From IMG/VR virus record IMGVR_UViG_3300014914_000030, positions 1 through 28,549 of that record: DNA of 28,549 bases; one strand, given 5' to 3'. This document shows, in pieces, positions 2,150 through 28,549 of this stretch (positions are counted from its first letter, which is position 1; each line of letters starts with the position of its first letter). The translations under genes were made by a program, and so were the position numbers. The notes under the pieces are model-generated. The model saw only the letters and a program-made list of their open reading frames with translations, did no database searches and was not told the DNA's origin.

Positions 2150-2159
2150 TTTTGGGTTA

Positions 2160-2735: not shown

Positions 2736-2763
2736 GATTCACGACCAATAAAGCAATTATTAA

Positions 2764-2785: not shown

Positions 2786-2817
2786 GGAGTTAGATTCAAG
2801 GTTAGGGGTAAAGCACT

Positions 2818-3533: not shown

Positions 3534-3535
3534 CT

Positions 3536-5049: not shown

Positions 5050-5059
5050 AAGTGGTCTT

Positions 5060-7420: not shown

Positions 7421-7442
7421 AAGATTCTAGGTGTAGCGTCTC

Positions 7443-9656: not shown

Positions 9657-9659
9657 GGC

Positions 9660-10855: not shown

Positions 10856-10861
10856 TTGTAC

Positions 10862-11932: not shown

Positions 11933-11942
11933 TTCAGCATTC

Positions 11943-12281: not shown

Positions 12282-12283
12282 GT

Positions 12284-12475
12284 TTAGCCTCTCCTTTGCT
12301 CTCTTAGTGGTCTAGGAGTTGGGCTTGTTCTTGGTCTTGGGGCTGTTTGTCTTGCTCTTCTCATATCTACTTTGATTGCCTCTGCTATTTTGGGTTCTAT
12401 CTGCTTGTAGAGTTCCGTGAATGATTTGGCTAATTCTTTCGGTCTAGTCCTTCTTTCAGCCATTTTAACCACCAT
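12284..12475 (-). CDS. Small basic protein
   Basis: Arg/Pro-rich tail; fills the gap between co-oriented genes. Confidence 0.55.
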   Translation of the reverse strand: MVVKMAERRTRPKELAKSFTELYKQIEPKIAEAIKVDMRRARQTAPRPRTSPTPRPLREQRRG

Positions 12476-16118: not shown

Positions 16119-16393
16119 TGGGTCATCACTTTCCTTAGAGTCTCCTTATCATAAGTGTACTCTATCATTTTTAGCTTTGTAAGTTCTATCTTAAGTTTGT
16201 TTATTAGGTCTTTGGTATCCTTTGCGTCTATGCCGTATCTTTTGGACTCTATTCCTCTATATCGGAAGGAAACTACAACATGGTATCTTGGTCTTCCACC
16301 TACTGGCTGTGTTTTGATTACTTCCCATACTGTAACTATTGCGTCATCTACCTCTATGGAAAAAGGGGGGAGACGTATTTCCATTCTTTCCAT
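16115..16393 (-). CDS. Hypothetical protein in structural operon
   Basis: 92 aa, ATGA overlap with the 1217-aa gene. Confidence 0.7.
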   Translation of the reverse strand: MERMEIRLPPFSIEVDDAIVTVWEVIKTQPVGGRPRYHVVVSFRYRGIESKRYGIDAKDTKDLINKLKIELTKLKMIEYTYDKETLRKVMTQ

Positions 16394-16394
16394 T

Positions 16395-16721
16395 TTAGCT
16401 TATGTACCCCTTATTAGATGGGGGTTGTATTTGCTTTAATAGGTTGTGCATTTTCTTTACTGTTTTGAAGAGTTCTCTGCATTTGTTAGCTAAGGGACAT
16501 TTATGTATGTCTTTGCAATCTAGGGTTGAGTATTCAAATGATAATTCATGCGTTTTTAAAAGTAGTTCTTGCATTGTTGCTGTTAGTTCATCTCTGACTT
16601 CTTGAGATATAGGTGGTGCTGGAACTGGTGGTTGAATCATACCGACAGAGCTAGGCGTTTGCGGACTTGCTTGAGGCGTTGTCCTATCCGTGTTTTTACG
16701 TCTCTTACGTGTTGTACCCAT
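16395..16721 (-). CDS. Hypothetical protein with Cys motif CKDIHKCPLANKC
   Basis: Co-oriented in operon, GGAGATGAG SD upstream. Confidence 0.6.
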   Translation of the reverse strand: MGTTRKRRKNTDRTTPQASPQTPSSVGMIQPPVPAPPISQEVRDELTATMQELLLKTHELSFEYSTLDCKDIHKCPLANKCRELFKTVKKMHNLLKQIQPPSNKGYIS

Positions 16722-17962
16722 ATACTCATCTCCTCATATAGTGTTTTTAATACGTCTGGATTTAAACCTTGAGACTCCCAGTTTTTCAACCACCAATCCT
16801 TGAACTCCTCTTCGGTCATTGATTCCCAAGCTTTGAAACCCCATGCATGTCTTTTAGCTCTCCAGCATATTGCTTGAAGTACTGCATTTTGGTATTGTCT
16901 GATTCTTAGGGGGTTTTGTTCTGATTTGGGGATTCTTGGGATTGTCCACCTTTCTATTTCTCCTCTTATCCTCATCAGGTTGTCATATTGGTCTGCTTTT
17001 TCGGATTTATGGAAGTTTGTCATTTCTTCTGGTCTGTTATAGTTGCTGTAAGCCCATGCTATTGCTGGTGCTCTGTTTATCATTCCATAGATTTTTTCGC
17101 ATAGTACCTTGATTATTGCTGGGTTTTCCTTTCCATTGGGAAGTTTGTATATGCTCTTCTTGGGTAGGAGTATTCCGTAGCCTAGAGGAGTAACTCCTAG
17201 TACGAAGCCTATTTGCAGATGGTCTAACGTTTTGAATTTTATCTCTGCTAGGTTGCCTTGTGCGTCTATTATTGGTACTTTTCCCATTCCGTTCTCTGTT
17301 TCTGTTAGGAAGCTTCTACCAAGTACGGATAATCCAAGCACAAATGCGTTTGTCTGTGCACTCATTATCATGAATAGCCTATTCCAAACCATGTCATCTG
17401 TAATTTCTATCATTTCCAGTAGTTCTTGTATTTGCTGTAGGTTGGTCTTCCATGATATGTCTGGGGTTCTTATCTGTCTCAGCTTGTAGAAGGTTGCTCT
17501 GAGAAATTCTCTCGCTACTACTGGGTCGTATAAGCCTCTTCCGTATGGAGTTACGCCATAAATTGCCTTTTCTCCTTTTCCAACCAGTAGGTCTGCTTGA
17601 TATTCTTCCTCAAAATTTTCTAGGATGTACTCTCTGTAGTCTGTCATCCATGAGTATAGTTTTTCGTAGGGTACTGGCTCGAAGTTAGCCCATATTCCTT
17701 GTAGGGTTTCCTCTACACTTGGAAGTTCATAGGTGAAGTCTATTGAGTAGGGTTCTAGGTCTATTGGGGTTATTGCGTTTAGTAGTCCTATTCCTAGCTC
17801 TGTTAGGTCGAATGCGGAGATTTGTAGCCATACAATTTCCGCAAATAGAGGGGATAAGTCTAGGCTTCTGGTGAAAGTTAGATTTATGGCTGAGTCAGAG
17901 GCTGTTTTTGTCCAGTATTTCTTTTTCCATTGTTCGTATGGTCTTTCCTTTGGGATTATCAA
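16637..17962 (-). CDS. Putative minor virion protein
   Basis: 441 aa between the MCP/GT locus and the large fibre gene; repeated YGVTPYG / FVLGLSVLG / FVLGVTPLG motifs reminiscent of rudivirus minor structural proteins (by memory, unverified). Confidence 0.6.
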   Translation of the reverse strand: MIIPKERPYEQWKKKYWTKTASDSAINLTFTRSLDLSPLFAEIVWLQISAFDLTELGIGLLNAITPIDLEPYSIDFTYELPSVEETLQGIWANFEPVPYEKLYSWMTDYREYILENFEEEYQADLLVGKGEKAIYGVTPYGRGLYDPVVAREFLRATFYKLRQIRTPDISWKTNLQQIQELLEMIEITDDMVWNRLFMIMSAQTNAFVLGLSVLGRSFLTETENGMGKVPIIDAQGNLAEIKFKTLDHLQIGFVLGVTPLGYGILLPKKSIYKLPNGKENPAIIKVLCEKIYGMINRAPAIAWAYSNYNRPEEMTNFHKSEKADQYDNLMRIRGEIERWTIPRIPKSEQNPLRIRQYQNAVLQAICWRAKRHAWGFKAWESMTEEEFKDWWLKNWESQGLNPDVLKTLYEEMSIWVQHVRDVKTRIGQRLKQVRKRLALSV

Positions 17963-17978
17963 GGCTTGTTCATGTTTG

Positions 17979-19001
17979 CTATTGTACGAATGCCTTATAT
18001 GTGTTTGTTATGTCCATTTGCTTTGCGTATTCTTTTAGTTTCTCCTTTAATCCATCGAAGTTTCCTCTAGATTTTTTGTATAGGTCAAAAACATAGAGAA
18101 CTGTTCTAGACATTTCTTCTGTATCAAAATAATGGCATAGATACCATATTCCGTCTCCAAAGTCTTTCATTTCAGTTTCAACTATTGGAACTGGGAAGTT
18201 GATGTTTGTAGGTGCTACTTGGGTTAGGGGTTCGTATTCTGGATATATACATGGTACTCCCAAGGCTTGAGCTTCTAGAAGTGGGAGACCAAACCCTTCA
18301 CATAGACTAGTCTGCAAGTACACATCAAAGCTTCCTATTAGGCTGAGCACTTCCCATCTTGGAAGTTTCATAAATCTTGTATCCACATAGACATTGGGTA
18401 AGTCATCAAACCACTTTGCTCCTCTTTCCTCTGTTAGCACATAGAACTTTATACTAGAATCTTTTTCTAGTGTTTGTTGCACCACTCTTGCTAGGTATTC
18501 TAAGCCTTTTCTTGGATGTCCACTCTGTACAGTACCCACTACAAACCTTGCTCCTAGTCTTTTGTGTAGGTCTTTTTTGAGCTTTTCAGCCTCTTCCACG
18601 TCTTCTAGGTTGATTCCGTGAGGAATGGTCTTAATAACTTGGAGTCCTATGGCTGTTAGCATTTTTTGTGTGAATTTGCTGTTTGCTATGTATAGGATGT
18701 CTTCTCTATGCCAGTCTTTTACAAGGTGTTGTTTTGGCATTCCTTCGACGGTTGCATAGCATACACCAGATATTCCGTGTTTTTGATAGTCTCTTAGTTG
18801 GAGAAGCCAGTTTCCCACATAGAGAGGGTCAAATGTCATAACCATTATTGCCTTGTCGAACTCTTTAACTGCATTGAACCAGAAAATTTGCTGTTTGAAG
18901 TGTTTGGCTGGTACTCCCAGCTTGTTGAGTGCTTTTGTTATGTCTTCTGCAACCACAACTAGACTTGTCTTATGTGGGCTAATGATACCGTATGTTGTCA
19001 T
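17979..19001 (-). CDS. GT4 (GT-B) glycosyltransferase next to MCP
   Basis: IANSKFT, IPHGIN, HPRKG, EGFGLPLLEAQALGVP; MCP-GT adjacency is typical of rudiviruses. Confidence 0.93.
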   Translation of the reverse strand: MTTYGIISPHKTSLVVVAEDITKALNKLGVPAKHFKQQIFWFNAVKEFDKAIMVMTFDPLYVGNWLLQLRDYQKHGISGVCYATVEGMPKQHLVKDWHREDILYIANSKFTQKMLTAIGLQVIKTIPHGINLEDVEEAEKLKKDLHKRLGARFVVGTVQSGHPRKGLEYLARVVQQTLEKDSSIKFYVLTEERGAKWFDDLPNVYVDTRFMKLPRWEVLSLIGSFDVYLQTSLCEGFGLPLLEAQALGVPCIYPEYEPLTQVAPTNINFPVPIVETEMKDFGDGIWYLCHYFDTEEMSRTVLYVFDLYKKSRGNFDGLKEKLKEYAKQMDITNTYKAFVQ

Positions 19002-19004
19002 ATC

Positions 19005-19011
19005 AAAAAAA
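19005..19011 (-). terminator. Oligo-T terminator after MCP
   Basis: T7 run on the minus strand about 35 nt downstream of the MCP stop. Confidence 0.4.
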
Positions 19012-19046
19012 TGGGGAACTTGAGGGTATTAAGGGTTTAGGCTAGT

Positions 19047-19421
19047 CTAGTAGGCTATAGCCCATCCACAGACTACGTTAATGATTTCATCACAGATGTC
19101 TGAGTTAAGTCCATAGGCGTTCACGAAGTAAGTCTTCAGAGCCGTAGCGATTGTCTTTGCTGAGTCTCCAGACTGGTGTAGGACATGTCTATAGAGCTTG
19201 GTGGCAAATGCCAAATAGGTGGCTCTTAAGCCACCCGTTACACCATAGTTGTCAAGGATTGGTCGAACCATGTCCCTTACCGTTCCGATTGCGTTGAGTC
19301 CAGCTTGTGCTCTGTCAAGGGCTACACTCTGAACATCTGTGAACCTTGTGCTAATTACTGTGGGGTTGAACTTCGCTTGGTATTTCTTGTACATGTCAAG
19401 ACCGTCTCTATAGAGGGGCAT
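19047..19421 (-). CDS. Major capsid protein, SIRV2/rudivirus-type (Adnaviria)
   Basis: KYQAKFNPTVIST, LDNYGVTGGLRATYLAFATK, LKTYFVNAYGLNSDICDEIINVV align with recalled rudivirus MCP motifs (KWQAKF..NPTVAST, YGITGPNRAIYQGFGLK, LKGYYISAFNANPQVLDAVVNII); AAGGTGA SD. Confidence 0.9.
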   Translation of the reverse strand: MPLYRDGLDMYKKYQAKFNPTVISTRFTDVQSVALDRAQAGLNAIGTVRDMVRPILDNYGVTGGLRATYLAFATKLYRHVLHQSGDSAKTIATALKTYFVNAYGLNSDICDEIINVVCGWAIAY

Positions 19422-19521
19422 TTTCCTTCACCTTTTCTTTTTTCTTACGAAAGCATTAAAAGGGTGGATTACATTAAAGGTAATTGCAAAGATTGAACTA
19501 GTGTGGGGTACTTTATTAGCC

Positions 19522-19899
19522 ATGCAGAAGCTTGAAGTAAAAGAGGAAGAGTTTGACGAAGCTTTAAATCTGGAGTACAGAGACGCTAGGAAGAGAGCTA
19601 TTGATAGTGCTCTTTATTTGGTTAAGAAGGAATTTCATTGGGTTTTGAGGTACTACCAAGCTAGGATGAATGAGCTTTTGGTTCGTGATGGGATTAGAAT
19701 TAATGAAAAGAGTGAGATTAGGATTGAGGGAAACAAGATTATTATGACTATTGAGGGTGAGATTACTGAGGATACAATTAAAGAAGCTACTGATGTGATT
19801 TTGAGAGCAAAGAGGAGTATTCTATCACGTAGGACTAATAGGCGTAAAAAATACAAGGCTGGGAGTACAGAATTATTGAGTACGGTAAAGGGTGGTTAA
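19522..19899 (+). CDS. Hypothetical protein, basic C-terminus
   Basis: ORF divergent from MCP; ATG at 19522 likelier than GTG at 19501. Confidence 0.7.
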   Translation: MQKLEVKEEEFDEALNLEYRDARKRAIDSALYLVKKEFHWVLRYYQARMNELLVRDGIRINEKSEIRIEGNKIIMTIEGEITEDTIKEATDVILRAKRSILSRRTNRRKKYKAGSTELLSTVKGG

Positions 19900-19900
19900 T

Positions 19901-20041
19901 TTGGCTACTAAGGTGTTGCAGATTGTTGTTCCAGCTAGGCTTTATGATAGGCTTGTTCAATGCAGTAAGAAGAGTGGGATTAGCAAGGAAGACTTAATTA
20001 TGAGGGCTTTAATCAAGGTTATTGAGGAGTTTGAGGGATGA
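19901..20041 (+). CDS. 46-aa ribbon-helix-helix protein (not in ORF track)
   Basis: TTG start after GGTGG; MATKVLQIVVPARLYDRLVQCSKKSGISKEDLIMRALIKVIEEFEG. Confidence 0.75.
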   Translation: MATKVLQIVVPARLYDRLVQCSKKSGISKEDLIMRALIKVIEEFEG

Positions 20042-20045
20042 AGTT

Positions 20046-20360
20046 ATGAGTCTTCAGCAAAAGATTTTGACTTTGATTTCTGGCATTCCAGACCCAGCTA
20101 CAAGGGTTGACATCGCTACTACGATTAATTATCTTTTCCAGTTGTATGTTGGTGGACATATCAATGAAGACCAAGTTAGAACTGAGCTTTATAATGTGTG
20201 TTATAGTGTGATTGGTGCTACGTATCCAGACTTAACAGAGGATGAAGTACGCAAGAAGGCTAATCAGCTTTCGGATGAGTTTATGAGAGTCTTTAGAATT
20301 GAGAATGTGCATAGGCGTATGGTCAGTAGGTTTGGGTCTGCAACTAGGCTTCCTTACTGA
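20046..20360 (+). CDS. Hypothetical alpha-helical protein
   Basis: MSLQQKIL... follows the RHH gene with GAGGGA SD. Confidence 0.75.
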   Translation: MSLQQKILTLISGIPDPATRVDIATTINYLFQLYVGGHINEDQVRTELYNVCYSVIGATYPDLTEDEVRKKANQLSDEFMRVFRIENVHRRMVSRFGSATRLPY

Positions 20361-20608
20361 GTTTTCTTTTTAGTTTTTTCTTTGATTATTCCTAGCTTTT
20401 TGAGTATTTTAACTTGTATTCCTATGAGAATTGCCATTACAAGGAATCCTAGGGGTATGCCTATTCCGATTCCTATAGCTCCAAGCAAAGCTCCAAAAAT
20501 ACACACAACTATGAAGGATACTAGGATGTCGAATAGAAATAGGATTACGCCTAAAAGTAGGTTAAGTATGTTTTTCGCTAGGTCTAGTAGGGCTTTTAGT
20601 TTCTTCAA
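20354..20608 (-). CDS. Small membrane protein (two TM segments)
   Basis: Long hydrophobic stretch with GIGIGIPLG turn and Lys-rich ends. Confidence 0.75.
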   Translation of the reverse strand: MKKLKALLDLAKNILNLLLGVILFLFDILVSFIVVCIFGALLGAIGIGIGIPLGFLVMAILIGIQVKILKKLGIIKEKTKKKTQ

Positions 20609-20906
20609 CCTTTTTCACCTCTATAAATGTGTATCTTCCTTCTTTTTTAATGAACACGAAGGGTCTTACCCTATATGTTCCAGCTAGGCTGTATAGGTCT
20701 TGGAATTTCTTGTGGAGCTTGGACAAGTCTTTAGGTGCTTCTGCTTTTTTGCATTGAACCAGCCAGATTTCGTTTTGGTCTGGGAAGAAGGCTATTAGGT
20801 CTGCTACGCCTAAGCTTCTGCTACTGCGTATTACGTATGCTCCTTTCTGCTTTAGGAGTTCTCTGCACCTATGCTCTACTAGGTATCCATATCTGTACGC
20901 CGACAC
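20562..20906 (-). CDS. hjc: Archaeal Holliday junction resolvase (PD-(D/E)xK)
   Basis: YRYGYLVE...L...GAYVIRSSRSLGVADLIAF...WLVQCK. Confidence 0.88.
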   Translation of the reverse strand: MSAYRYGYLVEHRCRELLKQKGAYVIRSSRSLGVADLIAFFPDQNEIWLVQCKKAEAPKDLSKLHKKFQDLYSLAGTYRVRPFVFIKKEGRYTFIEVKKVEETKSPTRPSEKHT

Positions 20907-20909
20907 TTC

Positions 20910-21446
20910 CTACCTCTCCATTCCGTAATATTTGGATTGGGATATTCCTAATGCTCCTAGGGTTACCATGATTATGTAGTTTGCTAGTTTAGGCATTTTC
21001 TTAACTACTCTTTCCTCAATCCACACTTTCTGGTTTTCTATGTCGAACCAGAGTGGTACAATGTCTCTCTGTAGGTTTCCGTGTTTGTCGTAGCGTTTCT
21101 TGGTGAGAATGTAGTAGGTTATTTTTCCTACTTGTTTCTTCTTTAGAATGAAGTTTTTGTCTGGAAATCTCTTTTGTAGGGTTGCTACGTATGTTTTGAG
21201 CTTTTCTAGAGTTATTTTTGCTGGTCTTGATTTTGGTACTATTATGAATTTCTGGTTGTATCTTCCGAATTGTCCTTTTCCGTTCACGATTGGGTAGTAG
21301 TCTCTGAAGATTTCAAGGATAATTGGGAATCTTCCGTGTACGATTTTATGGCATGTTTTACATAAGCGTCTGTATTGAAGTGGAGCATACCTTATAATGT
21401 GATATTCTAATGGTACGTCTGACCTTCCACATATCTCACATATCAT
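20910..21446 (-). CDS. Protein with N-terminal HNH-like zinc finger
   Basis: CEICG...YHII...LCKTCHKIVH; probable start 21446 with GGTGA SD and TATA upstream (the track extension to 21635 overlaps a plus-strand gene). Confidence 0.7.
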   Translation of the reverse strand: MICEICGRSDVPLEYHIIRYAPLQYRRLCKTCHKIVHGRFPIILEIFRDYYPIVNGKGQFGRYNQKFIIVPKSRPAKITLEKLKTYVATLQKRFPDKNFILKKKQVGKITYYILTKKRYDKHGNLQRDIVPLWFDIENQKVWIEERVVKKMPKLANYIIMVTLGALGISQSKYYGMER

Positions 21447-21469
21447 TGTGTTCACCATGTAGTATATGG

Positions 21470-21535
21470 TGCTTAAGTCCCTTATATACCTTACGGTTCT
21501 AAAGGGTATCAAAACGCTTATATACCGTAGGTGTA
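21470..21535. promoter_or_regulatory. Divergent BRE/TATA promoters
   Basis: Minus strand AAGGTATATAAG; plus strand AAAACGCTTATATA; between divergent genes. Confidence 0.65.
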
Positions 21536-21560
21536 TTAAGTTAATTAGGGGGATGGAAAA

Positions 21561-21725
21561 ATGGTCAAGGTAGTTAAGGTGTGGTTTGATGATGAGGTTT
21601 GGGAAGATGTTTGGAAAATAGTGAAGGCTATACATACGAATCCTACTAGGAAGTTTTCTTTAACTGTAAATGAATTGCTCAGAAAGGTTATTCCAGAGGA
21701 GAAAAAGAGGCTGGGGCTGGAGTAA
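21561..21725 (+). CDS. 54-aa RHH-like protein (not in ORF track)
   Basis: MVKVVKVWFDDEVWEDVWKIVKAIHTNPTRKFSLTVNELLRKVIPEEKKRLGLE; GGGGGA SD and TATA upstream. Confidence 0.7.
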   Translation: MVKVVKVWFDDEVWEDVWKIVKAIHTNPTRKFSLTVNELLRKVIPEEKKRLGLE

Positions 21726-21863
21726 ATGCCTAGAACAACCGAAAGTCTAGTCAAGTGCATAGGCAAATATAACGAAAATGACCTAGAATGCCAAAACTGT
21801 TTCTTCAAGGCTGAATGCATGGAAATCAAAAGGTTAAAGAAAATACGAAAACGTAAGGAGTGA
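21726..21863 (+). CDS. 45-aa four-Cys protein (not in ORF track)
   Basis: MPRTTESLVKCIGKYNENDLECQNCFFKAECMEIKRLKKIRKRKE; starts right after the upstream stop. Confidence 0.6.
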   Translation: MPRTTESLVKCIGKYNENDLECQNCFFKAECMEIKRLKKIRKRKE

Positions 21864-21871
21864 GCATAACA

Positions 21872-21988
21872 ATGAACTTGATATGCCTAGTAAAAGGACA
21901 CAAGTTTAAACGAATAGCCATTCTTTTTGGTTATGTACTAGTTTTAGAGTGTGAAAGGTGCGGAAAAATTGAGCTTAAGAGAGCATGA
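21872..21988 (+). CDS. 38-aa zinc-finger protein (not in ORF track)
   Basis: MNLICLVKGHKFKRIAILFGYVLVLECERCGKIELKRA; C-x4-H...CxxC; GGAGTGA SD. Confidence 0.6.
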   Translation: MNLICLVKGHKFKRIAILFGYVLVLECERCGKIELKRA

Positions 21989-22391
21989 TGAATTTATCAA
22001 GCATTTAAGGGAAGAAATCAATTTCCTACGTAAGAGAGTAGCTAAACTAGAAGAGGAAAACGCCTTACTCAGAAATGCTCTAGCCCAGAAAGTGGATGAC
22101 CTAGAACCAACCTATAGGGAAATCGAAGATAGACTAGACCGTTTAAAAACACACGTTCTAAAAGCCATAAGATTTCTAATTAGAAGTCGAAAAAGACCAG
22201 TAAACTATGAGGAAATCATAAAGGCTGTGCAAGTAAGGTATCCCTTCAAAATTAAAGCAGAGACCATAACACGGACAGTACGGAAACTAAAAGAGGAAGG
22301 CTACCTATTCTCTCCCAAAAAAGGGTACTTTATGCTTTCAGATACCCCACCACAAGAAATAGGACAATCAACTCTCAGTTCTTTTAAGTAA
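21951..22391 (+). CDS. Coiled-coil plus winged-helix DNA-binding protein
   Basis: N-terminal heptads; C-terminal TITRTVRKLKEEGYLFSPKKGYF; likely TTG start at 21969. Confidence 0.8.
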   Translation: MKGAEKLSLREHDEFIKHLREEINFLRKRVAKLEEENALLRNALAQKVDDLEPTYREIEDRLDRLKTHVLKAIRFLIRSRKRPVNYEEIIKAVQVRYPFKIKAETITRTVRKLKEEGYLFSPKKGYFMLSDTPPQEIGQSTLSSFK

Positions 22392-22652
22392 AACAGCAAT
22401 TCCCTCATTGACCGTCTTTAGCTCACGTAAGACCTTCCCTATGTTGTTTCCCAGCTTAATCATGTTATGGTTCATCTCATTGAGAGCCTTTGTAATTTGA
22501 CTATTCTGTTCCAGCACAAGAGCAACAAGCAAAGTATTTAGCTCATTCCCTTTCAAACGCCTATTTCCTACAATTTCCTTGAACTTTTGAGCTATCGTAG
22601 GAGCAAACACGTCAATCAAGGTAGCTAGTACATCACCCATGCTCCTACTCAC
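22368..22652 (-). CDS. Hypothetical coiled-coil protein
   Basis: 94 aa helical; GGAG SD and TTAAAA promoter upstream. Confidence 0.65.
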   Translation of the reverse strand: MSRSMGDVLATLIDVFAPTIAQKFKEIVGNRRLKGNELNTLLVALVLEQNSQITKALNEMNHNMIKLGNNIGKVLRELKTVNEGIAVLLKRTES

Positions 22653-22708
22653 TCCTTTTCAAAATATTATCGTGAAAAACTATTTTAAGCCTTATCGGAA
22701 TGAGGGTC

Positions 22709-22780
22709 AGTTAGCCCATTTCCGAACATCGGGGAGATTTGGGGCGTAACTGTAGGTGTAATTTGGGGGTTGGGCTAACT
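22709..22780. repeat. 10-bp inverted repeat enclosing G-rich loop
   Basis: AGTTAGCCCA (22709..22718) / TGGGCTAACT (22771..22780). Confidence 0.7.
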
Positions 22781-22860
22781 TCATCATCCCATACTCTAAA
22801 ATTTTAGACAGAGACTTGAATTTTTTGTGGTTAAGGTTTATATTCAAAAAATAAAAAATA

Positions 22861-23580
22861 GTGAAATTGCGGTCTGCAAGCAGAAAATATAGGAGTTGTA
22901 GCATAAAAATGTTACGAACTGAAATGAGCCGTGAAGAATGTCTAGCATTATTATCTACTACTACTACTGACTGGGTTAAGGTCAGAGGCTTCTCAATTGA
23001 GCTTCTGCACCATCTCAGAGACAAGCAACTACTCCTATGTGAACTCTGCGAACTGACTGGAAAAGACCCCATTTACGTAAATGTCTATCTGAATCGCCTT
23101 AGACGGTACGGATTCGTTCAGAAAGACCGTTATTACTATAGAATAACTGAAATTGGAGTTGCTTTGCTTAATATACTTAATACACTTAATACACTTAAGT
23201 ACACAAAATATAACAGTTATATAACAGTTATTAAACAGAAATATAACAGAAATATAACAGAAAAAAGAGCTTCAAAGCAAGCTTCTTTGAGGCAAACTGG
23301 CTTGGAGCTTTGGCTTCAGAGTTGCGATTTGAGTGAGAAAGAGAAGGAAGTAGTAGAGGTACTGATAGACCATTACAACAAAACTGGCTCTAAATATCTG
23401 TATTTTGACACTCCATTCGACTTTGCAGAAAGATTCAAGATTAGTCCACAAATGGCTACTGAAGTACTAAAACGCCTAAAGCAAGACGGAATCATTTACG
23501 TGTTCAGAGACAGACAACTTGGCTCATGGAAGATAGGCTTAAAGTCAGCCTTCCTTGAAGCCCTCAAGCTCTCTCAATAA
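22861..23580 (+). CDS. Double winged-helix protein, candidate replication/origin-binding protein
   Basis: Two wHTH signatures (YLNRLRRYGFVQK..YYYRITEIG; VLKRLKQDGIIYV..WKI) joined by a repeat-encoded linker; true start may be 22909 or 22924. Confidence 0.75.
   Translation: MKLRSASRKYRSCSIKMLRTEMSREECLALLSTTTTDWVKVRGFSIELLHHLRDKQLLLCELCELTGKDPIYVNVYLNRLRRYGFVQKDRYYYRITEIGVALLNILNTLNTLKYTKYNSYITVIKQKYNRNITEKRASKQASLRQTGLELWLQSCDLSEKEKEVVEVLIDHYNKTGSKYLYFDTPFDFAERFKISPQMATEVLKRLKQDGIIYVFRDRQLGSWKIGLKSAFLEALKLSQ
23167..23260 (+). repeat. Tandem 9-bp (x4) and 11-bp (x5) AT-rich repeats, iteron-like
   Basis: CTTAATA(T/C)A x3 plus CTTAAGTACA at 23167..23203; AAATATAACAG, TTATATAACAG, TTATTAAACAG, AAATATAACAG, AAATATAACAG at 23206..23260. 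Confidence 0.9.
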
Positions 23581-23746
23581 TCGGAAAGATTAACATCCAA
23601 AAATCAAGCCTCTGCACGTTCTTTTTAGAGGGATAATACTGCAAAAAACACCTTTCACACATAGGAACTTTAGTTTTGTTCACAGCATCCCTAACATACG
23701 TATCTGTAGGCTCTCCACAAATAAAACAAGGAAACTTCTTTACCAA
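23564..23746 (-). CDS. Small zinc-finger protein
   Basis: CFICG...MCERC. Confidence 0.7.
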   Translation of the reverse strand: MVKKFPCFICGEPTDTYVRDAVNKTKVPMCERCFLQYYPSKKNVQRLDFWMLIFPIIERA

Positions 23747-24015
23747 TCTACATCACCAAGCCAGACCTCACTCTCTTTAGGGTAGTATCTCTTAGCTAAA
23801 GCCTTACGCAAAAGCTCATTCCCCCTCATTTTGCTGGTCAATGTATTAACAAGCTTCCTAGCTCTCCAGTACTTTCGGCGTAACCTATACAAAATGGTAT
23901 AGGCTGTACGTTCCTTAATACCAATAGCATGTGCAGAATCCTTGATGGTCAAATGCTCTCTCATAGCTTCAATCAACCTTTCCTCTAAAGGCGTAAGTAC
24001 CCTTTCTTCAGACAT
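23740..24015 (-). CDS. Helix-turn-helix protein
   Basis: LTPLEERLIE...TIKDSAHAIGIKERTAYTILYRLRRK; GGTGAGG SD. Confidence 0.85.
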   Translation of the reverse strand: MSEERVLTPLEERLIEAMREHLTIKDSAHAIGIKERTAYTILYRLRRKYWRARKLVNTLTSKMRGNELLRKALAKRYYPKESEVWLGDVDW

Positions 24016-24032
24016 AACCTCACCAAGCCAAA

Positions 24033-24055
24033 TTTATACATGCAGAATGTATAAA
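24033..24055. promoter_or_regulatory. Palindromic operator overlapping TATA box of HTH gene
   Basis: TTTATACAT-GCAGA-ATGTATAAA, perfect 9-bp arms. Confidence 0.65.
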
Positions 24056-24155
24056 AATCTTATGTCCGCAAAAAGACTTATCACAAATTCCGAAAGACTT
24101 CCACAAAAAAGTAATAAAAAAGCTGAAAAAAATAAGGGTACTTAACGTAGGTTAA

Positions 24156-24359
24156 CTACTCAACTTTTAGCTCTTCTATTAGCTCTTCGCAAGCTTCCTT
24201 GAACGGTAGCGGAATGAAGATAGCTACCACATGCATGTTCAACTTCTGGATTTTGTAGATTTTAGCCCAACCCCAGAACCCATTAAGGGCTTCTCCATTC
24301 TGAATACGCACTTGCTTAGAGTCTTTCACCATTACCTCATAATCAAGCTCTTCCATCAT
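24156..24359 (-). CDS. Hypothetical protein
   Basis: 67 aa, translationally coupled in the minus-strand operon. Confidence 0.6.
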   Translation of the reverse strand: MMEELDYEVMVKDSKQVRIQNGEALNGFWGWAKIYKIQKLNMHVVAIFIPLPFKEACEELIEELKVE

Positions 24360-24634
24360 TTCTCACTCTCCAATTTGGCTAATTCCGTATAGTTAGGCAT
24401 GTACTCCTTACAGATTTTAGCCAAATTCCAGACCTCAAAAGGCTTCCTTCCTTCCCATTGGTTGAGCAAAGGTGCAATAGCCCTATACAATGCACAGACA
24501 TTGACATGCTTACAGTACTTGCAACTCCTAGCGTCTTCAATCTCCACTTTAGGCATTCTAACAGTTAAGGTCATACTAGACCACTCTCCCTTACGTACAA
24601 GAGAAAGAGGGACAGAGTTCATGCTCTTGCTCAT
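24356..24634 (-). CDS. Cys-rich hypothetical protein
   Basis: SCKYCKHVNVC...ICKEY. Confidence 0.65.
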   Translation of the reverse strand: MSKSMNSVPLSLVRKGEWSSMTLTVRMPKVEIEDARSCKYCKHVNVCALYRAIAPLLNQWEGRKPFEVWNLAKICKEYMPNYTELAKLESEK

Positions 24635-24851
24635 ATTGTTCCTCTAAGACCTTCCTAATCTCAGAGGCTACCGTCTCAAGAGCCTTAGCAAGTATGTGGG
24701 TAGCGTCTAGCTGGATTACAATGCTGTAGTCTCCCTTTCTCGGTCTGTACTTCTCAATCCATAGATAAGGTGGATGGTAGTGTCCCTTGATAGTAAAGCG
24801 AATGCCTTGTACGGTTACAGAAATGTCCTTTCCTTCTCTTTCGACCTTCAT
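24591..24851 (-). CDS. Hypothetical protein
   Basis: 86 aa, beta-strands then helix; ATGA-coupled to upstream ORF. Confidence 0.6.
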   Translation of the reverse strand: MKVEREGKDISVTVQGIRFTIKGHYHPPYLWIEKYRPRKGDYSIVIQLDATHILAKALETVASEIRKVLEEQYEQEHELCPSFSCT

Positions 24852-25018
24852 TCTTTCAACCTCTGTATTTCCTTTAAGACAGTTCTAACGGTCTCCTCAA
24901 GGTTTGGATGTTCCCATCCGACACATAGTTGCACTAGCAGACTAGTATCATCCAATATTTTCTGGTAGTGGAATTTCGCTAAAGCCCTTGCATGTTTTCT
25001 AATCTCTTCATCCTTCAT
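24848..25018 (-). CDS. 56-aa hypothetical protein (not in ORF track)
   Basis: MKDEEIRKHARALAKFHYQKILDDTSLLVQLCVGWEHPNLEETVRTVLKEIQRLKE fills the operon gap exactly. Confidence 0.65.
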   Translation of the reverse strand: MKDEEIRKHARALAKFHYQKILDDTSLLVQLCVGWEHPNLEETVRTVLKEIQRLKE

Positions 25019-25021
25019 AGA

Positions 25022-25876
25022 CTAGACCACCGCAACTACTGGGCTTAAAATCTTGTGTAGCTCATCAAACATTCTGTTCTTGGTTACAATGTCTTGACGG
25101 ACATTATGCCAAATCCTCTCGGTAACATCATTGTAGGTATCCCAGACGGTCTTGGACTCATCGAACCACACAAGCTCAGTTCCTTCCGTCTTAATGTAAG
25201 GTGGTAACAGCTTTCTTGGAAGTCTGCTTTTAGCTATGCTCTCAGCAATTTCCTCATTAAGCTGAAGCTCAACCATCTTACGATAAGCCTCTAACACCTT
25301 CTCCATAGCATTGATTACATCCATTGTACGTTTCAGAATATTATCCATGTCAACCTTCAAGCCCTTAGTGTGCTTGTGGTAAAACCTCGCAAGCTCTCTG
25401 TAGCCCATGAAAACACCATTAGAGCACATTTCTCTATATGTGAATCCAGTAACGCTAAACGCTAGTGTTCCATCAATGCTGTTTCTGAAGGCAAATCCAA
25501 TCTTGCACCTATCCCTTCCGTCTATCTCATGCCATTCTGGGAGAGTATAGACCAAATAGACCTTCCAAGAATCCTTGCTGAAATAGGCGTTACCCCACTC
25601 AGTAGGTAGCCTAGTCTTCTCAAGCAGAGGCTCTGCATTCAGCCTACTAGCTATTTCATCAGCTACTTGCTTGACAACCTCATTAGGAAGAACTTGATAG
25701 CCCCTACCGACAATTGCTACAAGCCTTCCGTTCTTGAGAATAGCCTTGTAAGGTGTCTGCTTGTCATTGTATTTTAGGTATGCCTCTGTAATGTTGTATT
25801 CTTTCCAAGTCTCATCTATTTTACCTACATCAAATACAATCTTCATCTCGGACACGGCTACATCCCCCCTTTTCAT
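25022..25876 (-). CDS. DUF932/DUF945-like phage/plasmid protein
   Basis: IVGRGYQVLPNE, FRNSIDG, YREMCSNG, TVWDTYNDVTE match the family motif order. Confidence 0.8.
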   Translation of the reverse strand: MKRGDVAVSEMKIVFDVGKIDETWKEYNITEAYLKYNDKQTPYKAILKNGRLVAIVGRGYQVLPNEVVKQVADEIASRLNAEPLLEKTRLPTEWGNAYFSKDSWKVYLVYTLPEWHEIDGRDRCKIGFAFRNSIDGTLAFSVTGFTYREMCSNGVFMGYRELARFYHKHTKGLKVDMDNILKRTMDVINAMEKVLEAYRKMVELQLNEEIAESIAKSRLPRKLLPPYIKTEGTELVWFDESKTVWDTYNDVTERIWHNVRQDIVTKNRMFDELHKILSPVVAVV

Positions 25877-25994
25877 GTTAACTACATGTTAATATGCACC
25901 TAAGTCCTATAAAAACCTTTCTATTTGCATAAATTATACAAACACAAAAAAGGAAGCTATACAATACTTAAATACTCAGCTAGTCCAACATTAG

Positions 25995-26201
25995 TTGGTG
26001 AAAACAAAAATGTCCGAAGAAAGGAGATACGGAAGACCAAGGACAGACCAAGAAAGGCAACTTAGACACTTCCAGAGAACTGGAGAATTGCTCCCAATAG
26101 ACCAGCTACCCCCAAGAGGAACTGGACTCAAAACATGGAAACAGACCAGCACAAGTACTAGACCCATCCCCCTAAAAGAGCTAAGAAGACAACAGAGATA
26201 A
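25995..26201 (+). CDS. Small basic protein
   Basis: YGRPRTDQER..RH...LPPRGTGL; GGTGA SD before ATG at 26010, own TTAAATA promoter. Confidence 0.7.
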   Translation: MVKTKMSEERRYGRPRTDQERQLRHFQRTGELLPIDQLPPRGTGLKTWKQTSTSTRPIPLKELRRQQR

Positions 26202-26271
26202 GACCCTCAATCTACACAAAATTAGAAAACCTTAAATTAGGCTTATTTCTCGACTTCTAAGTGGTGAAAAT

Positions 26272-26379
26272 ATGGACTGGAGTTGGGTACAGCCAGTAAT
26301 AGGGCTATTCGTATCTGGGCTAATTGTCGGTCTAGGCTTCGCAATCGGATGGAAAGTGATACACGGAAAGGAGAAATAG
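26272..26379 (+). CDS. 35-aa single-TM peptide (not in ORF track)
   Basis: MDWSWVQPVIGLFVSGLIVGLGFAIGWKVIHGKEK; GGTGA SD and AAAACCTTAAAT promoter. Confidence 0.7.
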   Translation: MDWSWVQPVIGLFVSGLIVGLGFAIGWKVIHGKEK

Positions 26380-26487
26380 ACTCGACAATCTCGAAAACTA
26401 CTTCTTAAATCCCCATTTTTTTAGACCATACTCGCAACCCTTATAATGAGGACTAGTCTAACAACATAGCATAGGTGAAAGAAGAAA

Positions 26488-26778
26488 ATGAATCCCATAC
26501 CATTGAAAGAATGGGAAAGACTCAGAAACTACACTCAGAAGCTTTCGGAAGGAGTAACTAGCGTACAAAACACTCTAGAAGCATACAAGCATGATGTGGA
26601 TGAAATTGTAAACACCTACATAGACCAAAACAAATGGCTAGAAAAAGTCAAAAATGCATGGGAATCCCAAAAAGTCAACCCTACTGCATGTGAGGAAGCT
26701 CTAAGAACACTAGATGAGCATAAACCAGTAACGCCTAAACCAGTACCAATTCCACTAAGCCAAATCAGAGCAAGATAA
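26488..26778 (+). CDS. Small helical protein
   Basis: 96 aa, AGGTGA SD, CCTTATAA promoter. Confidence 0.75.
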   Translation: MNPIPLKEWERLRNYTQKLSEGVTSVQNTLEAYKHDVDEIVNTYIDQNKWLEKVKNAWESQKVNPTACEEALRTLDEHKPVTPKPVPIPLSQIRAR

Positions 26779-26790
26779 AAAAAGGGAAAG

Positions 26791-27270
26791 TTAAGGCTTA
26801 GCTGTTATAATCAAGTCTGGTCGAATAGCTAATCTTTTCCCTACCTTGCACTCCTCAAGCTCAATGAACTCATTGAACTCCTCAACAACCTCTCTAGTTA
26901 TGTCCTTGTAGAAGGCTTTAGCTTCATGGTATAATCCACTATCATCATAGTCTCCTACAAGGTAAATCTCATCTCCAGCCCATCTTCCACAAGTCTTAAA
27001 CCTTCCTTTCCCTAGAGGAGTCCTAGAAATTCTGCTTATAGTCTCTAAAGCCTTTTCCTTAGTCTTCTTGTCTTTTGCATCCCAGTAGAGCCTCTCAGCC
27101 TCTTTAAACTCTGGCTCAAAGTTGCACATGCCAGTACCATCCATTGGAGCTTTAGCTACTAGCCAGCACAGAAGTCTAGCCTCGTTATTAGCAAGCCATT
27201 CCCAGAGCTTAGAGCCACCTTTAACGTACTCCTTTTTGGTCTTATTTACAAGTAGGAAGTACTGCCCCAT
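26791..27270 (-). CDS. Conserved viral hypothetical protein (MGQY...GRWAGD..VGDY type)
   Basis: Motifs MGQYFLLVNKTKKEY and GRWAGDEIYLVGDY; strong promoter upstream. Confidence 0.8.
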   Translation of the reverse strand: MGQYFLLVNKTKKEYVKGGSKLWEWLANNEARLLCWLVAKAPMDGTGMCNFEPEFKEAERLYWDAKDKKTKEKALETISRISRTPLGKGRFKTCGRWAGDEIYLVGDYDDSGLYHEAKAFYKDITREVVEEFNEFIELEECKVGKRLAIRPDLIITAKP

Positions 27271-27299
27271 CTCTACTTAACCCCCCTAATAACCATAAT

Positions 27300-27325
27300 A
27301 CCCTTAAGGGTATATAAACCTTTTG
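27300..27325 (-). promoter_or_regulatory. Strong BRE/TATA promoter followed by palindrome TACCCTTAAGGGTA
   Basis: Minus strand AAAAGGTTTATATACCCTTAAGGGTA. Confidence 0.7.
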
Positions 27326-27373
27326 CAATTACACAAAATCGAAAAAGATAAAAAATTGGGAAATTTTGGGAGC

Positions 27374-28357
27374 TTAGCTCAGCATGTCAAGGATTTTCTG
27401 TTTAGCCTTAGCCTTGTAGTCTTCCAATAGCTGTTTTACTTGACTTCTGAGTGCTTCAGCCTTAGCTCTGAGCTTTTCGTAAATCTCCCTATCCCAGTAG
27501 CTATAAATGGCTTCTATGAGTATTCTCCTAAACTCTTCTGGTACGTAAGCAACTAGTGAATCAAGCTCTACAATATACTCATGCTCATAATTCTTGTACC
27601 TTGGGTCTCTCTGCAATTTGGCTAAGGTTTCTGCGTCTTCTGGTCTAGGTGGAAGGTTGTACTTCCTAACTTGCTCTGGAGTAACAGCAAGCCTTATCAG
27701 TTGCACCTTATCCTCTGGAAGACCAAAATAGTCTAAGGCTTCCTTGAGAAACCTCTCAATGTCAACTCCAGAAGGGTCTAAGTCTCCCAAGTACAATATA
27801 ATGACTTTATCATGTTTCTCAAGCTCATACCTCAATGCTTGAACATTGTTGTAGATAAATGTCCAGCTTGAATATCCTCTGTTAACCCTTATCAAAACTC
27901 CTAGTCCTTCTGTCCAGTTTTGAATTGTAGAGCTTAAAGCTTCCTTCTCTATCCAAATCTCAACTGCATAAGGCTGTTCTGCCCATCTACCGACAGTTAT
28001 GAAAGGCTGTAGGTAGTCAAAGGTTTCTGCTAGCATTTTGTCAATGTCAAGCTCTTCAAGTCTCTGCTTTAGGGTCTCCTCAAACCTTTCAACCTCATCA
28101 TCTCTGAATCTTCCATCATCAATATTTCCATAGACAAGTCTGGTTTTGTCCTCAAGGAAATCCCACTCATATCTCCCTTGCTTCCTAGCATTAACTAGCT
28201 TCCTTGACAGTTGCTTGTAGCTACTCCTTGTGTTTGGAATTATGTTCTTGCTGACCAAGTAGTAGAACAATGTTCTAAGTGTAGGCTTGACTCCTTGACT
28301 ACTGAAGTACCTTAAAGCTTCATCCACATGTTCTAGTACTTCTCCCCAATTTATCAC
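27374..28357 (-). CDS. Topoisomerase VI-A/Spo11-related (Mini-A-like) WHD-TOPRIM protein
   Basis: TLRTLFYYLV (catalytic Tyr region), VEIWIEKEAL, RGYSS, ILYLGDLDPSG (DxD), VELDSL; probable GTG start at 28357 with GGTGA SD. Confidence 0.82.
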   Translation of the reverse strand: MINWGEVLEHVDEALRYFSSQGVKPTLRTLFYYLVSKNIIPNTRSSYKQLSRKLVNARKQGRYEWDFLEDKTRLVYGNIDDGRFRDDEVERFEETLKQRLEELDIDKMLAETFDYLQPFITVGRWAEQPYAVEIWIEKEALSSTIQNWTEGLGVLIRVNRGYSSWTFIYNNVQALRYELEKHDKVIILYLGDLDPSGVDIERFLKEALDYFGLPEDKVQLIRLAVTPEQVRKYNLPPRPEDAETLAKLQRDPRYKNYEHEYIVELDSLVAYVPEEFRRILIEAIYSYWDREIYEKLRAKAEALRSQVKQLLEDYKAKAKQKILDMLS

Positions 28358-28426
28358 CTTAATCACCGTAATATACTTAAGTGCATTAGGTGTATATAAG
28401 CATTGTGGTCTAGTCCACAACCAAAC

Positions 28427-28549
28427 CCTTCTCTCCTCTGCTACTGCTATAGACTTGACCACTCCTTATTCTCATGCCTAAAGCTTTTGTAATTTCAAGC
28501 TTTCCGTAATTAAAAATTCAATATCCTCGACATACAACCACAAAATCCT
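28427..28549. repeat. Right inverted terminal repeat (123 bp)
   Basis: Exact reverse complement of 1..123. Confidence 0.98.

What the first reader, a model, noticed from the sequence alone, without database searches (positions are those of the whole stretch)
21600..21900. Strand-composition skew flips near 21.7 kb
By eye the plus strand is G/T-rich left of about 21725 regardless of gene direction (plus genes end codons in T/G, minus genes in A/C) and A/C-rich to the right. Under the usual deamination model this fits strand-displacement replication starting at both ends and meeting asymmetrically here; an ancient inversion or module fusion is an alternative.
Basis: partly seen in the sequence, partly recalled or inferred. 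Interest (0 to 1): 0.6.

Follow-up and report, generated by a model that had tools for sequence, protein, structure and literature searches.

The report
Two unequal replication arms, archaeal virus
The two DNA strands of this near-complete linear archaeal rod-shaped virus genome differ strongly in base composition whichever way the genes point, and the bias reverses abruptly at about 21.7 kb, which most likely means the genome is copied inward from both ends in two unequal arms, as already proposed for the archaeal "Borg" elements.

Summary
At third codon positions the plus strand has GC skew +0.31 and AT skew -0.38 in all 25 genes left of 21.5 kb, on either coding strand. To the right it is -0.15/+0.17. 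Intergenic DNA flips too. The change point is 21,723 (support 21,610-21,763), far beyond block-shuffle controls.

The window is a linear virus record with inverted terminal repeats. Its capsid protein is rudivirus-like and no polymerase gene was found.

Most relatives tested (ten other lineages) show the same pattern: the G+T-rich strand runs 5'->3' inward from each end, with one switch (absent from two partial sequences) at a variable position (76%, 90%, 48% of length). One relative has no skew. SIRV2, SMRV1 and AFV1 lack it. ABV, which has a protein-primed polymerase, shares the polarity. Borgs are the published analogue.

The switch is a step between two plateaus, not the gradient that simple two-ended strand displacement predicts.

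In this genome the switch abuts a roughly 1-kb block (about 21.7-22.7 kb) that is inverted in sister strains, whose switch lies at about 22.7 kb.

Terminal origins were not shown directly, because no raw reads exist.

The parts
1..123 (.). Left inverted terminal repeat. It is probably only the inner part of a longer repeat.
   Evidence: A 123-nt perfect inverted repeat with 28427-28549. IMG/VR classes the record as having inverted terminal repeats. The Logan k=31 contig of the source sample starts at window 94, which is 30 nt (k-1) inside the repeat. That is the behaviour expected when an assembler stops inside a longer collapsed repeat.
124..21725 (.). Long arm. The plus strand is G+T-rich at synonymous and intergenic sites in genes of both orientations. 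It carries the structural module.
   Evidence: The G+T fraction at third positions is 0.66 in + genes and 0.69 in - genes. The profile is flat along the arm, with a slope of +0.007 per kb (p = 0.056).
21610..21763 (.). Support interval of the compositional change point (best estimate 21,723).
   Evidence: The logistic transition width is at most 0.1-0.2 kb.
21726..28426 (.). Short arm. The plus strand is A+C-rich in genes of both orientations, with a weaker bias than the long arm.
   Evidence: The G+T fraction at third positions is 0.42 in + genes and 0.43 in - genes beyond 22.7 kb, and 0.33-0.42 in the 21.7-22.7 kb block.
21561..21725 (+). 54-aa ORF that ends exactly at the switch. It is the last gene with long-arm composition.
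   Evidence: Third positions on the plus strand are G 23, T 18, A 11, C 2. An ortholog of about 50% identity lies on the opposite strand in L025 and is also G+T-rich on the plus strand. Orthologs lie 150-550 nt from the switch in L021, L025 and G002. It has no Pfam match.
21726..21863 (+). 45-aa cysteine-rich ORF. It is the first gene with short-arm composition and starts one base after the stop codon of the previous ORF.
   Evidence: Sequence read. The frame was worked out by hand after and was not re-translated. The 200-nt window 21724-21923 has G+T excess -0.20 and AT skew +0.36. It has no Pfam match.
21699..22669 (.). Block that is inverted in closely related strains.
   Evidence: Logan contigs of other metagenomes join 21460 to 22669 and 21699 to 22705 on opposite strands (X2 depth 84 and 51; X3 depth 14). 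The JGI contig L025 aligns to window 22390->21871 in reverse at 92.9% identity, between colinear flanks ending at 21467 and starting at 22705. No flanking inverted repeats were found.
21951..22391 (+). Gene A, a coiled-coil plus winged-helix-like protein inside the invertible block.
   Evidence: About 95% amino-acid identity to the L025 copy on the other strand. The plus-strand G+T fraction at third positions is 0.36 here and 0.70 there. The G001 homolog is on the minus strand in that genome's long arm.
22368..22652 (-). Gene B, a 94-aa protein inside the invertible block.
   Evidence: Homologs lie on the plus strand, beside the Zn-finger gene in G002 and 1.4 kb beyond the resolvase gene in G003. 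The G+T fraction at third positions is 0.33.
20562..20906 (-). Holliday-junction resolvase (Hjc-like).
   Evidence: PF01870, E = 1.3e-4, above the gathering score. It is conserved in G001-G004. In G004 it lies 1.2-1.5 kb from that genome's switch.
20910..21455 (-). Zn-finger protein with an HNH-like CxxC...CxxCH motif at its N-terminus. It is the last long-arm gene before the divergent promoter region.
   Evidence: The motif was read from the translation. No family match was found. It is conserved in G001, G002, G004 and L025. The start codon was chosen by eye.
19047..19421 (-). Major capsid protein of the SIRV2 type.
   Evidence: PF12193, E = 1.3e-20. It is 33-36% identical to Rudiviridae capsid proteins.
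28427..28549 (.). Right inverted terminal repeat.

Best explanation
The window is the near-complete linear genome of an uncultivated, rudivirus-like archaeal virus from hydrothermal sediment. Its two strands have been driven apart in composition by a mutation pressure tied to replication, not by gene direction or codon choice.

In each arm, the strand whose 5' end lies at the nearer terminus is G+T-rich. That is the signature of the strand left single-stranded at the fork, either as lagging-strand template or as displaced strand. At high temperature such a strand loses C to T and A to G.

[quoted passage not shown] Because the arms are flat plateaus and no viral polymerase is encoded, forks with the same strand exposure all along each arm (for example host-type coupled forks) fit better than classical uncoupled strand displacement.

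The switch is a discrete point. Rearrangements that move genes across it are inversions, so a gene keeps its relation to the local bias. One such roughly 1-kb inversion or recombinant block fixes the exact coordinate (21,725) in this strain.

Shown: the strand-specific bias, its independence of gene orientation, its step shape, its conservation among relatives, and the inversion polymorphism.

Inferred: fork direction, terminal origins, and deamination as the chemical cause.
For: - Orientation-independent skew at third positions, fourfold sites and intergenic DNA, with a highly significant change point.
- Same pattern and polarity, wherever a switch is seen, in relatives found through the conserved 441-aa protein:
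  - G001 (30.1 kb, terminal repeats): switch at about 27.2 kb.
  - G004 (41.2 kb, terminal repeats): switch at 19.9 kb, with both 20-kb arms equally skewed.
  - G002, L020 (weak), L021, L022, L025 and L030 also show a switch.
  - L032 and G003 are skewed but show no switch within the sequence held.
- In-situ action of the pressure. The 54-aa ORF orthologs sit on opposite strands in the window and in L025, yet both leave the plus strand G+T-rich.
- Calibration. ABV, which has terminal repeats and its own protein-primed polymerase, shows G-richness running inward from both ends, whatever the gene orientation in its left half (its right half carries genes on one strand only).
- Published analogue. 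Borgs are linear, have terminal repeats, have two unequal replichores, and are inferred to replicate from their ends by cumulative GC skew (PMC9605863).
- Rudiviruses are known to initiate at their termini (PMC5062984).
- Genes that change arm between genomes also change strand: gene A, the Topo-VI-A-like gene, the Hjc plus Zn-finger pair, and gene B in G002 and G003.
- The junction at 21.7 kb is not an assembly artefact. An independent Logan contig of the source sample spans 18,800-22,972 without a difference, and a contig from another sample spans 21,516-21,780.
Against: - There is no direct evidence of where replication starts. All public runs holding this DNA are kept only as contigs, so there is no depth gradient and no molecule ends.
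- A fixed, off-centre meeting point of two forks needs a barrier or strict timing. No conserved motif was found at the switches.
- The classical strand-displacing rudivirus SIRV2 shows no such skew.
- One family member, L031, has none.
- A parsimony-polarised substitution count in the long arm did not show the expected excess of C>T over G>A per site (ratio 0.85). Only A>G over T>C did (ratio 2.0). The test is small and biased by the skewed composition.
- The short arm's bias is half as strong, and at fourfold sites its GC component does not reverse.
Confidence: 0.6

Rival explanations
1. The switch is a site-specific internal origin. Forks diverge from it, and in this host-virus system the mutational polarity is the reverse of the bacterial rule. 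That could happen if deaminated bases are fixed mainly on the leading-strand template, because archaeal polymerases stall at uracil and hypoxanthine and lagging-strand gaps are repaired without error.
For: - A fixed origin explains the step shape and the plateaus naturally.
- It also explains why the switch can sit anywhere along the genome.
- In several lineages the switch lies in or beside a promoter or intergenic region next to a small conserved ORF.
- The structural genes would then be co-oriented with the forks.
Against:
- From general knowledge, it is also opposite to archaeal chromosomes with mapped origins, such as Pyrococcus.
- No origin-like repeats or initiator gene lie at the switch. 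The only tandem repeats (23,167-23,263) are inside a coding region 1.5 kb away.
- The Borg precedent was read the other way.
Confidence: 0.15
2. The pattern is purely historical. The family replicates in one direction from one end, which makes the plus strand G+T-rich throughout, as in PSV. The short arm is DNA that was inverted or acquired in the opposite orientation and has not yet re-equilibrated.
For: - The short arm's bias is weaker.
- Real inversions next to the switch exist among strains that are 90-95% identical.
- PSV and fragment G003 are skewed uniformly, with no switch.
- Short-arm genes such as the Topo-VI-A-like gene and the DUF932 gene resemble genes of bacterial phages and plasmids.
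Against: - G004 has two 20-kb arms of equal and opposite bias.
- Every lineage in which a switch is seen has one main switch with the same inward polarity (single-breakpoint fits). No skew islands of a kilobase or more appear in the binned profiles, although random inversions would create them.
- In the short arm beyond the inverted block, genes of both orientations share the reversed bias.
Confidence: 0.15
3. The bias comes from selection on codon usage, from transcription-coupled mutation, or from a chimeric assembly.
For: None specific. These are the usual confounders of skew plots, and in Borgs skew and coding strand coincide.
Against: - Plus-strand and minus-strand genes in the same arm use opposite third-position letters (T-ending against A-ending). 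Translational selection and transcription cannot do that.
- Intergenic DNA flips too.
- Independent contigs from at least two samples cross the junction.
Confidence: 0.03

Closest known systems
Borg extrachromosomal elements of Methanoperedens (Al-Shayeb et al. 2022, PMC9605863)
   Same: - Linear archaeal replicons with inverted terminal repeats.
- Cumulative GC skew rises from one end to a single off-centre maximum and then falls. This was read as two replichores of unequal length replicating from the ends.
   Different: - Borgs are 0.66-0.92 Mb and carry nearly all genes of a replichore on one strand, so their skew cannot be separated from coding-strand effects.
- Here the genome is 28.5 kb, each arm has genes on both strands, and the bias is shown to be independent of orientation.
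- The AT component is as strong as the GC component.
Acidianus bottle-shaped virus and other protein-primed linear replicons (phi29, adenovirus, salterproviruses)
   Same: Inverted terminal repeats, and a G-rich strand running inward from both ends, irrespective of gene direction in ABV's left half (its right half has genes on one strand only; ABV). From general knowledge, this is the classical interpretation of skew in two-ended strand displacement (Grigoriev 1999).
   Different: - ABV encodes its own protein-primed polymerase, and its GC-skew switch is near the middle. Its width is poorly resolved, with a broad transition slightly favoured for GC.
- The present family encodes no polymerase.
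- Its switch is sharp and lies anywhere from 48% to 90% of the length.
Rudiviridae (SIRV2, SMRV1)
   Same: - SIRV2-type capsid protein, two glycosyltransferases, an ORF1070-like large structural protein, a Holliday-junction resolvase, and a linear genome with terminal repeats.
- SIRV2 initiates at both termini.
   Different: - BLAST finds no homolog of the rudiviral Rep (ORF119) or of the gp17-gp19 recombination genes.
- SIRV2 and SMRV1 show no orientation-independent strand bias of comparable size.
Bacterial and Borrelia-type replichores, with inversions symmetric about origin or terminus
   Same: - Step-like plateaus of skew.
- Rearrangements across the switch are inversions that preserve each gene's relation to the local bias.
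   Different: - The switch here has terminus polarity, and the origins would be the chromosome ends.
- The magnitude (G+T fraction at third positions of 0.68 against 0.41) is, from general knowledge, far above typical bacterial values.

Membership tests
Replication-associated strand asymmetry with terminal origins (unequal replichores) | The skew belongs to the DNA strand and is independent of gene orientation. | tested here: met
   The strand term is +0.31/-0.38 against -0.15/+0.17, and the coding term is at most 0.08.
Replication-associated strand asymmetry with terminal origins (unequal replichores) | The skew is present at synonymous and non-coding sites, so it is mutational rather than selected. 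| tested here: met
   The fourfold-site AT skew goes from -0.44 to +0.16. Intergenic skew goes from +0.13/-0.14 to -0.10/+0.13.
Replication-associated strand asymmetry with terminal origins (unequal replichores) | There is a single polarity switch, with the G+T-rich strand running 5'->3' from each end inward. | tested here: met
   The cumulative GC skew has one maximum. A single change point is found. The same holds in the complete relatives G001 and G004.
Replication-associated strand asymmetry with terminal origins (unequal replichores) | The pattern is conserved among relatives despite rearrangement. | tested here: met
   All but one of the other lineages tested are skewed: nine clearly, L020 only weakly. 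L031 is not.
Replication-associated strand asymmetry with terminal origins (unequal replichores) | There is direct evidence that forks start at the termini, such as a depth gradient, replication intermediates or Okazaki-fragment polarity. | not testable with these tools
   All runs are kept only as Logan contigs.
Uncoupled two-ended strand displacement (adenovirus or phi29 type) | The skew magnitude declines roughly linearly from each end to the meeting point. | tested here: not met
   The arms are flat. Transition widths of 3.2 kb or more are rejected by 50-150 log-likelihood units in the combined G+T fits for the window, G001 and G004.
Uncoupled two-ended strand displacement (adenovirus or phi29 type) | The genome encodes a protein-primed family-B polymerase and a terminal protein. 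| tested here: not met
   No polymerase family matched any ORF scanned, including the only two ORFs over 500 aa. None was found among the ten large ORFs of G004's extra arm that were scanned.
Rudiviridae | A SIRV2-type major capsid protein. | tested here: met
   PF12193, E = 1.3e-20. Identity to rudiviral capsid proteins is 33-36%.
Rudiviridae | The rudiviral Rep (ORF119) and the gp17-gp19 replication and recombination genes. | tested here: not met
   tblastn with all SIRV2 and SMRV1 proteins hits only the capsid protein, two glycosyltransferases, the large structural protein and a ribbon-helix-helix protein. Homologs too distant for BLAST are not excluded.
Rudiviridae | Covalently closed hairpin termini. 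| not testable with these tools
   Only assembled contigs are available. The terminal repeat seen is probably limited by the assembler's k-mer size.

The most novel reading that the evidence does not exclude
The switch is a genetically fixed replication terminus or processing site in a small archaeal virus. Forks entering from the two terminal repeats would always stop, or be resolved, at one defined site. That site may be tied to the adjacent small conserved ORF or to the HNH-like and Hjc nuclease genes. It would also act as a hotspot for inversions that move genes between arms. As far as I know, no fork trap of this kind has been described in archaea or their viruses.
Probability: 0.2. Interest if true: 0.7.

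Novelty: new member of a known kind. Interest (0 to 1): 0.5.

Why it matters
The virus belongs to a large, uncultivated family of rod-shaped archaeal viruses. More than 150 relatives of one structural protein occur in vent and hot-spring metagenomes, and the replication of this family is unknown.

Because genes lie on both strands within each arm, this genome separates replication-linked bias from coding-strand effects more cleanly than Borgs do. That strengthens the idea that some linear archaeal replicons with terminal repeats replicate inward from their ends in two unequal replichores.

The step-like switch, its variable position and the inversions across it give concrete, testable targets for replication mapping. 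These include read-depth profiling, Okazaki-fragment mapping and terminus mapping.

The contrast with the Sulfolobus rudiviruses, which show no bias, points to a real difference in replication mode or in single-strand exposure within the same virus realm.

In practice, the strong strand bias will distort codon-usage, phylogenetic and host-prediction analyses of these viruses unless it is modelled.

Tried and rejected
- Near-identity DNA search in the phage and archaeal-virus collection found nothing.
- A single-sequence locus search in IMG/VR found nothing. A profile search was needed.
- Codon-selection and transcription explanations are rejected because + and - genes in one arm use opposite third-position letters and intergenic DNA flips as well.
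- Assembly chimera is rejected because independent contigs cross the junction.
- Linear-gradient models, whether unequal use of the two ends or forks meeting with exposure proportional to distance, are rejected by the transition-width fits.
- Models with an internal nick, rolling circle or rolling hairpin were worked through by reasoning. All predict the opposite, outward polarity under the single-strand deamination rule.
- Site-specific invertase switch: no inverted repeats flank the 21.7-22.7 kb block.
- Conserved cis element at the switches: the G-rich motif GGGGGTTGG is near the switch only in the window, L025 and G004, and no 9-mer is shared by more than 4 of 8 lineages. The motif TGTATTAAG is not enriched.
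- Polarised substitution spectrum (window, L023, with L025 as outgroup): inconclusive, with small counts and parsimony bias under skewed composition.
- Sequencing runs: all are kept only as contigs, so there is no depth gradient, no strand information and no molecule ends.
- The AFV1 replication paper could not be found in the library. PBV300 (Ahmunviridae) is not in the genome collection.
- There is no tRNA gene or attachment-site hint.
- Sequence search of the Topo-VI-A-like protein against solved structures gave nothing significant.

Full report
**What the window is.** The 28,549-bp window is a whole IMG/VR virus record with perfect 123-nt inverted terminal repeats. It has no close DNA relative among deposited phage and archaeal-virus genomes. 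Gene content:
- a SIRV2-type major capsid protein (19047-19421, minus strand; PF12193, E = 1e-20; 33-36% identical to Rudiviridae capsid proteins)
- several glycosyltransferases, a B12-binding radical-SAM enzyme and a methyltransferase
- a 1,217-aa protein related to rudiviral ORF1070
- a Holliday-junction resolvase and ribbon-helix-helix and winged-helix regulators
- in the right-hand 7 kb, a DUF932 protein and a Topo-VI-A-like protein

No DNA polymerase, and no homolog of the rudiviral Rep or gp17-gp19, was detected.

The conserved 441-aa protein (16637-17962, minus strand) has more than 150 relatives in vent, sediment and hot-spring metagenomes. Some sit in bins labelled Caldarchaeum, Archaeoglobales or Bathyarchaeia. 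The family may correspond to the Caldarchaeales-associated rod-shaped viruses of a 2025 preprint, which does not mention skew.

**The observation.** It is real and strong.
- On the plus strand, third-position GC skew is positive and AT skew negative in every one of the 25 genes left of 21.5 kb, whichever strand encodes them.
- Pooled values are +0.34/-0.32 for plus-strand genes and +0.29/-0.44 for minus-strand genes on the left. On the right they are -0.10/+0.25 and -0.20/+0.09.
- The strand term is therefore +0.31/-0.38 on the left and -0.15/+0.17 on the right. The coding-strand term is below 0.08.
- At fourfold sites the plus strand of the left arm is about 55% T and 6-10% C.
- Intergenic DNA flips as well.
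- A two-segment model places the change at 21,723, with support 21,610-21,763. The likelihood gain is 157, against at most 49 in block shuffles.
- Independent contigs from the source sample and from another sample cross the junction, so it is not an assembly artefact.

**Shape of the signal.** The bias is a plateau in each arm. Slopes along the arms are about +0.007 per kb (borderline in the window and G001, opposite in sign and non-significant in G004's left arm). The reversal is a step.
- The logistic width is at most about 0.2 kb in the window.
- It is at most 0.4-0.8 kb in relatives G004, G001 and L025.
- Widths of 3.2-12.8 kb, which approximate a linear gradient, are rejected by 50-150 log-likelihood units in the combined G+T fits.

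**Relatives.**
- Complete genomes with terminal repeats show the same thing. G001 (30.1 kb) switches at about 27.2 kb. G004 (41.2 kb) switches at 19.9 kb and has two equally skewed 20-kb arms.
- Partial genomes G002, L020 (weak), L021, L022, L025 and L030 also switch. L032 and G003 are skewed without a switch in the sequence held. L031 has no skew.
- Wherever a switch is seen, the G+T-rich strand runs 5'->3' from the end inward. In every skewed lineage the structural genes lie on the A+C-rich coding strand.
- Among known archaeal viruses tested here, SIRV2, SMRV1 and AFV1 have no strand term. PSV is T- and G-rich on one strand throughout. ABV, which has terminal repeats and a protein-primed polymerase, has the same inward polarity with a switch near mid-genome.

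**The local rearrangement.**
- Contigs of other metagenomes join 21460 to 22669 and 21699 to 22705 on opposite strands.
- The JGI contig L025 is colinear with the window up to 21,467 and from 22,705 onward, but carries 21,871-22,390 in reverse at 93% identity.
- In L025 the skew switch lies at the position equivalent to about 22.65-22.7 kb.
- Gene A (21951-22391) is about 95% identical at the protein level between the two genomes and carries its composition with it. Its plus-strand G+T fraction at third positions is 0.36 here and 0.70 in L025.
- The neighbouring 54-aa ORF is only about 50% identical, lies on opposite strands in the two genomes, and leaves the plus strand G+T-rich in both.
- So the pressure acts in place, and a block has moved across the switch by inversion or by recombination between lineages of opposite arrangement.
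- Other genes that sit in different arms in different genomes have also changed strand. This is the behaviour of inversions that span a replication switch point. No inverted repeats flank the block.

**Mechanism.** By the standard rule, the strand left single-stranded at the fork gains T and G. This holds for bacterial leading strands and for the mitochondrial heavy strand, and is calibrated here on ABV. Under that rule, forks move rightward through 1-21.7 kb and leftward through 21.7-28.5 kb, so replication enters from both terminal repeats.
- This matches terminal initiation in rudiviruses and the published reading of Borgs, which have two unequal replichores and origins in the terminal repeats.
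- The plateaus and the absence of a viral polymerase fit forks with the same strand exposure all along each arm, such as coupled forks, better than classical uncoupled displacement.
- What fixes the switch at a sharp, off-centre and lineage-specific point is unexplained. No shared motif was found.
- An internal origin with reversed mutational polarity, or a largely historical origin of the short arm, cannot be excluded without replication mapping.
- The only substitution-spectrum test possible was inconclusive.

**Verdict.** The phenomenon is a new, unusually clean and strong example of a known kind, namely replichore-type strand asymmetry in a linear replicon with terminal origins, in a virus family where it had not been noted.

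Noticed in passing
window 23700-24156: A second pair of opposite-strand joints (23700 to 24156 and 23701 to 24141; depth 81 and 60) appears in contigs of metagenome X2. This suggests another inversion of about 450 nt between close strains within the short arm.
   Followed up: no
window 27374-28462 (-): A 362-aa protein matches phrog_6247, annotated 'DNA topoisomerase' (E = 3e-48), and has relatives in many tailed phages. By eye it carries an RTLFYY motif and Toprim-like IEKE and DLDPSG motifs, as in the Topo VI A / Spo11 family. From memory it resembles the 'mini-A' proteins of mobile elements. Its annotated start overlaps the right terminal repeat by 36 nt. A 68%-identical homolog in G001 lies in the other arm on the other strand, and G004 has none.
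   Followed up: partly
window 1-123 and 28427-28549: The terminal repeats are probably longer than 123 nt. The Logan k=31 contig of the source sample begins at window 94, exactly k-1 nt inside the repeat. G001 also has exactly 123 nt, while its near-identical MEGAHIT k141 twin contig is 36 nt longer. The record is therefore likely the unique region plus k-mer-limited stubs of the true repeats.
   Followed up: partly
L031 (ENA contig of 48,511 bp; locus 1-21329): This family member, whose 441-aa protein is 55% identical, shows essentially no strand bias (G+T fraction at third positions 0.50 against 0.48). It is a natural contrast for finding which gene or lifestyle produces the skew.
   Followed up: no
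L029 (Pyrobaculum spherical virus, NC_005872) and L028 (ABV, NC_009452): PSV has a uniform bias across the whole genome (AT3 about -0.4, GC3 about +0.15), and its annotated minus-strand genes share it, so there is no switch. ABV switches GC skew near mid-genome with inward polarity. Strong strand bias may be common in linear viruses of hyperthermophiles outside the Sulfolobales rudiviruses.
   Followed up: partly
window 20910-21455 (-): The Zn-finger protein next to the Hjc resolvase has an N-terminal CxxCG...H...CxxCH pattern that resembles an HNH nuclease motif. No profile matched it. The long ORF call (to 21635) has an implausible low-complexity N-terminus, so the start is probably near 21455. 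In L025 most of the Hjc gene is deleted (window 20495-20759 is missing).
   Followed up: no
window 7443-9656 (+): A 737-aa protein is built of many degenerate repeats of about 20 aa (SDWISK / SDYVSK-like). It has a larger homolog in G001 (5368-8952), and a smaller match in G004 (33520-34173). Its function is unknown.
   Followed up: no
window 23167-23263: AT-rich tandem repeats (9 nt x 4 and 11 nt x 5) lie inside the double winged-helix, ArsR-like gene 22861-23580. The 9-mer TGTATTAAG also occurs once, in the opposite orientation, in the promoter region at 21532 just left of the switch. Overall it is not enriched.
   Followed up: partly
L023 and L024 (JGI contigs of 94%-identical strains): One contig (L023) ends at the equivalent of window ~21.1 kb, just short of the switch and the invertible block; L024 ends about 115 nt earlier by gene coordinates. 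This is consistent with structural polymorphism breaking assemblies there.
   Followed up: no
window 22766-22778 and 24262-24274: A perfect 13-nt inverted pair, GGGGTTGGGCTAA, is present. The first copy lies in a G-tract-rich, conserved intergenic region (22705-22860; within a 1.46-kb stretch 95.6% identical to L025) immediately right of the invertible block.
   Followed up: no
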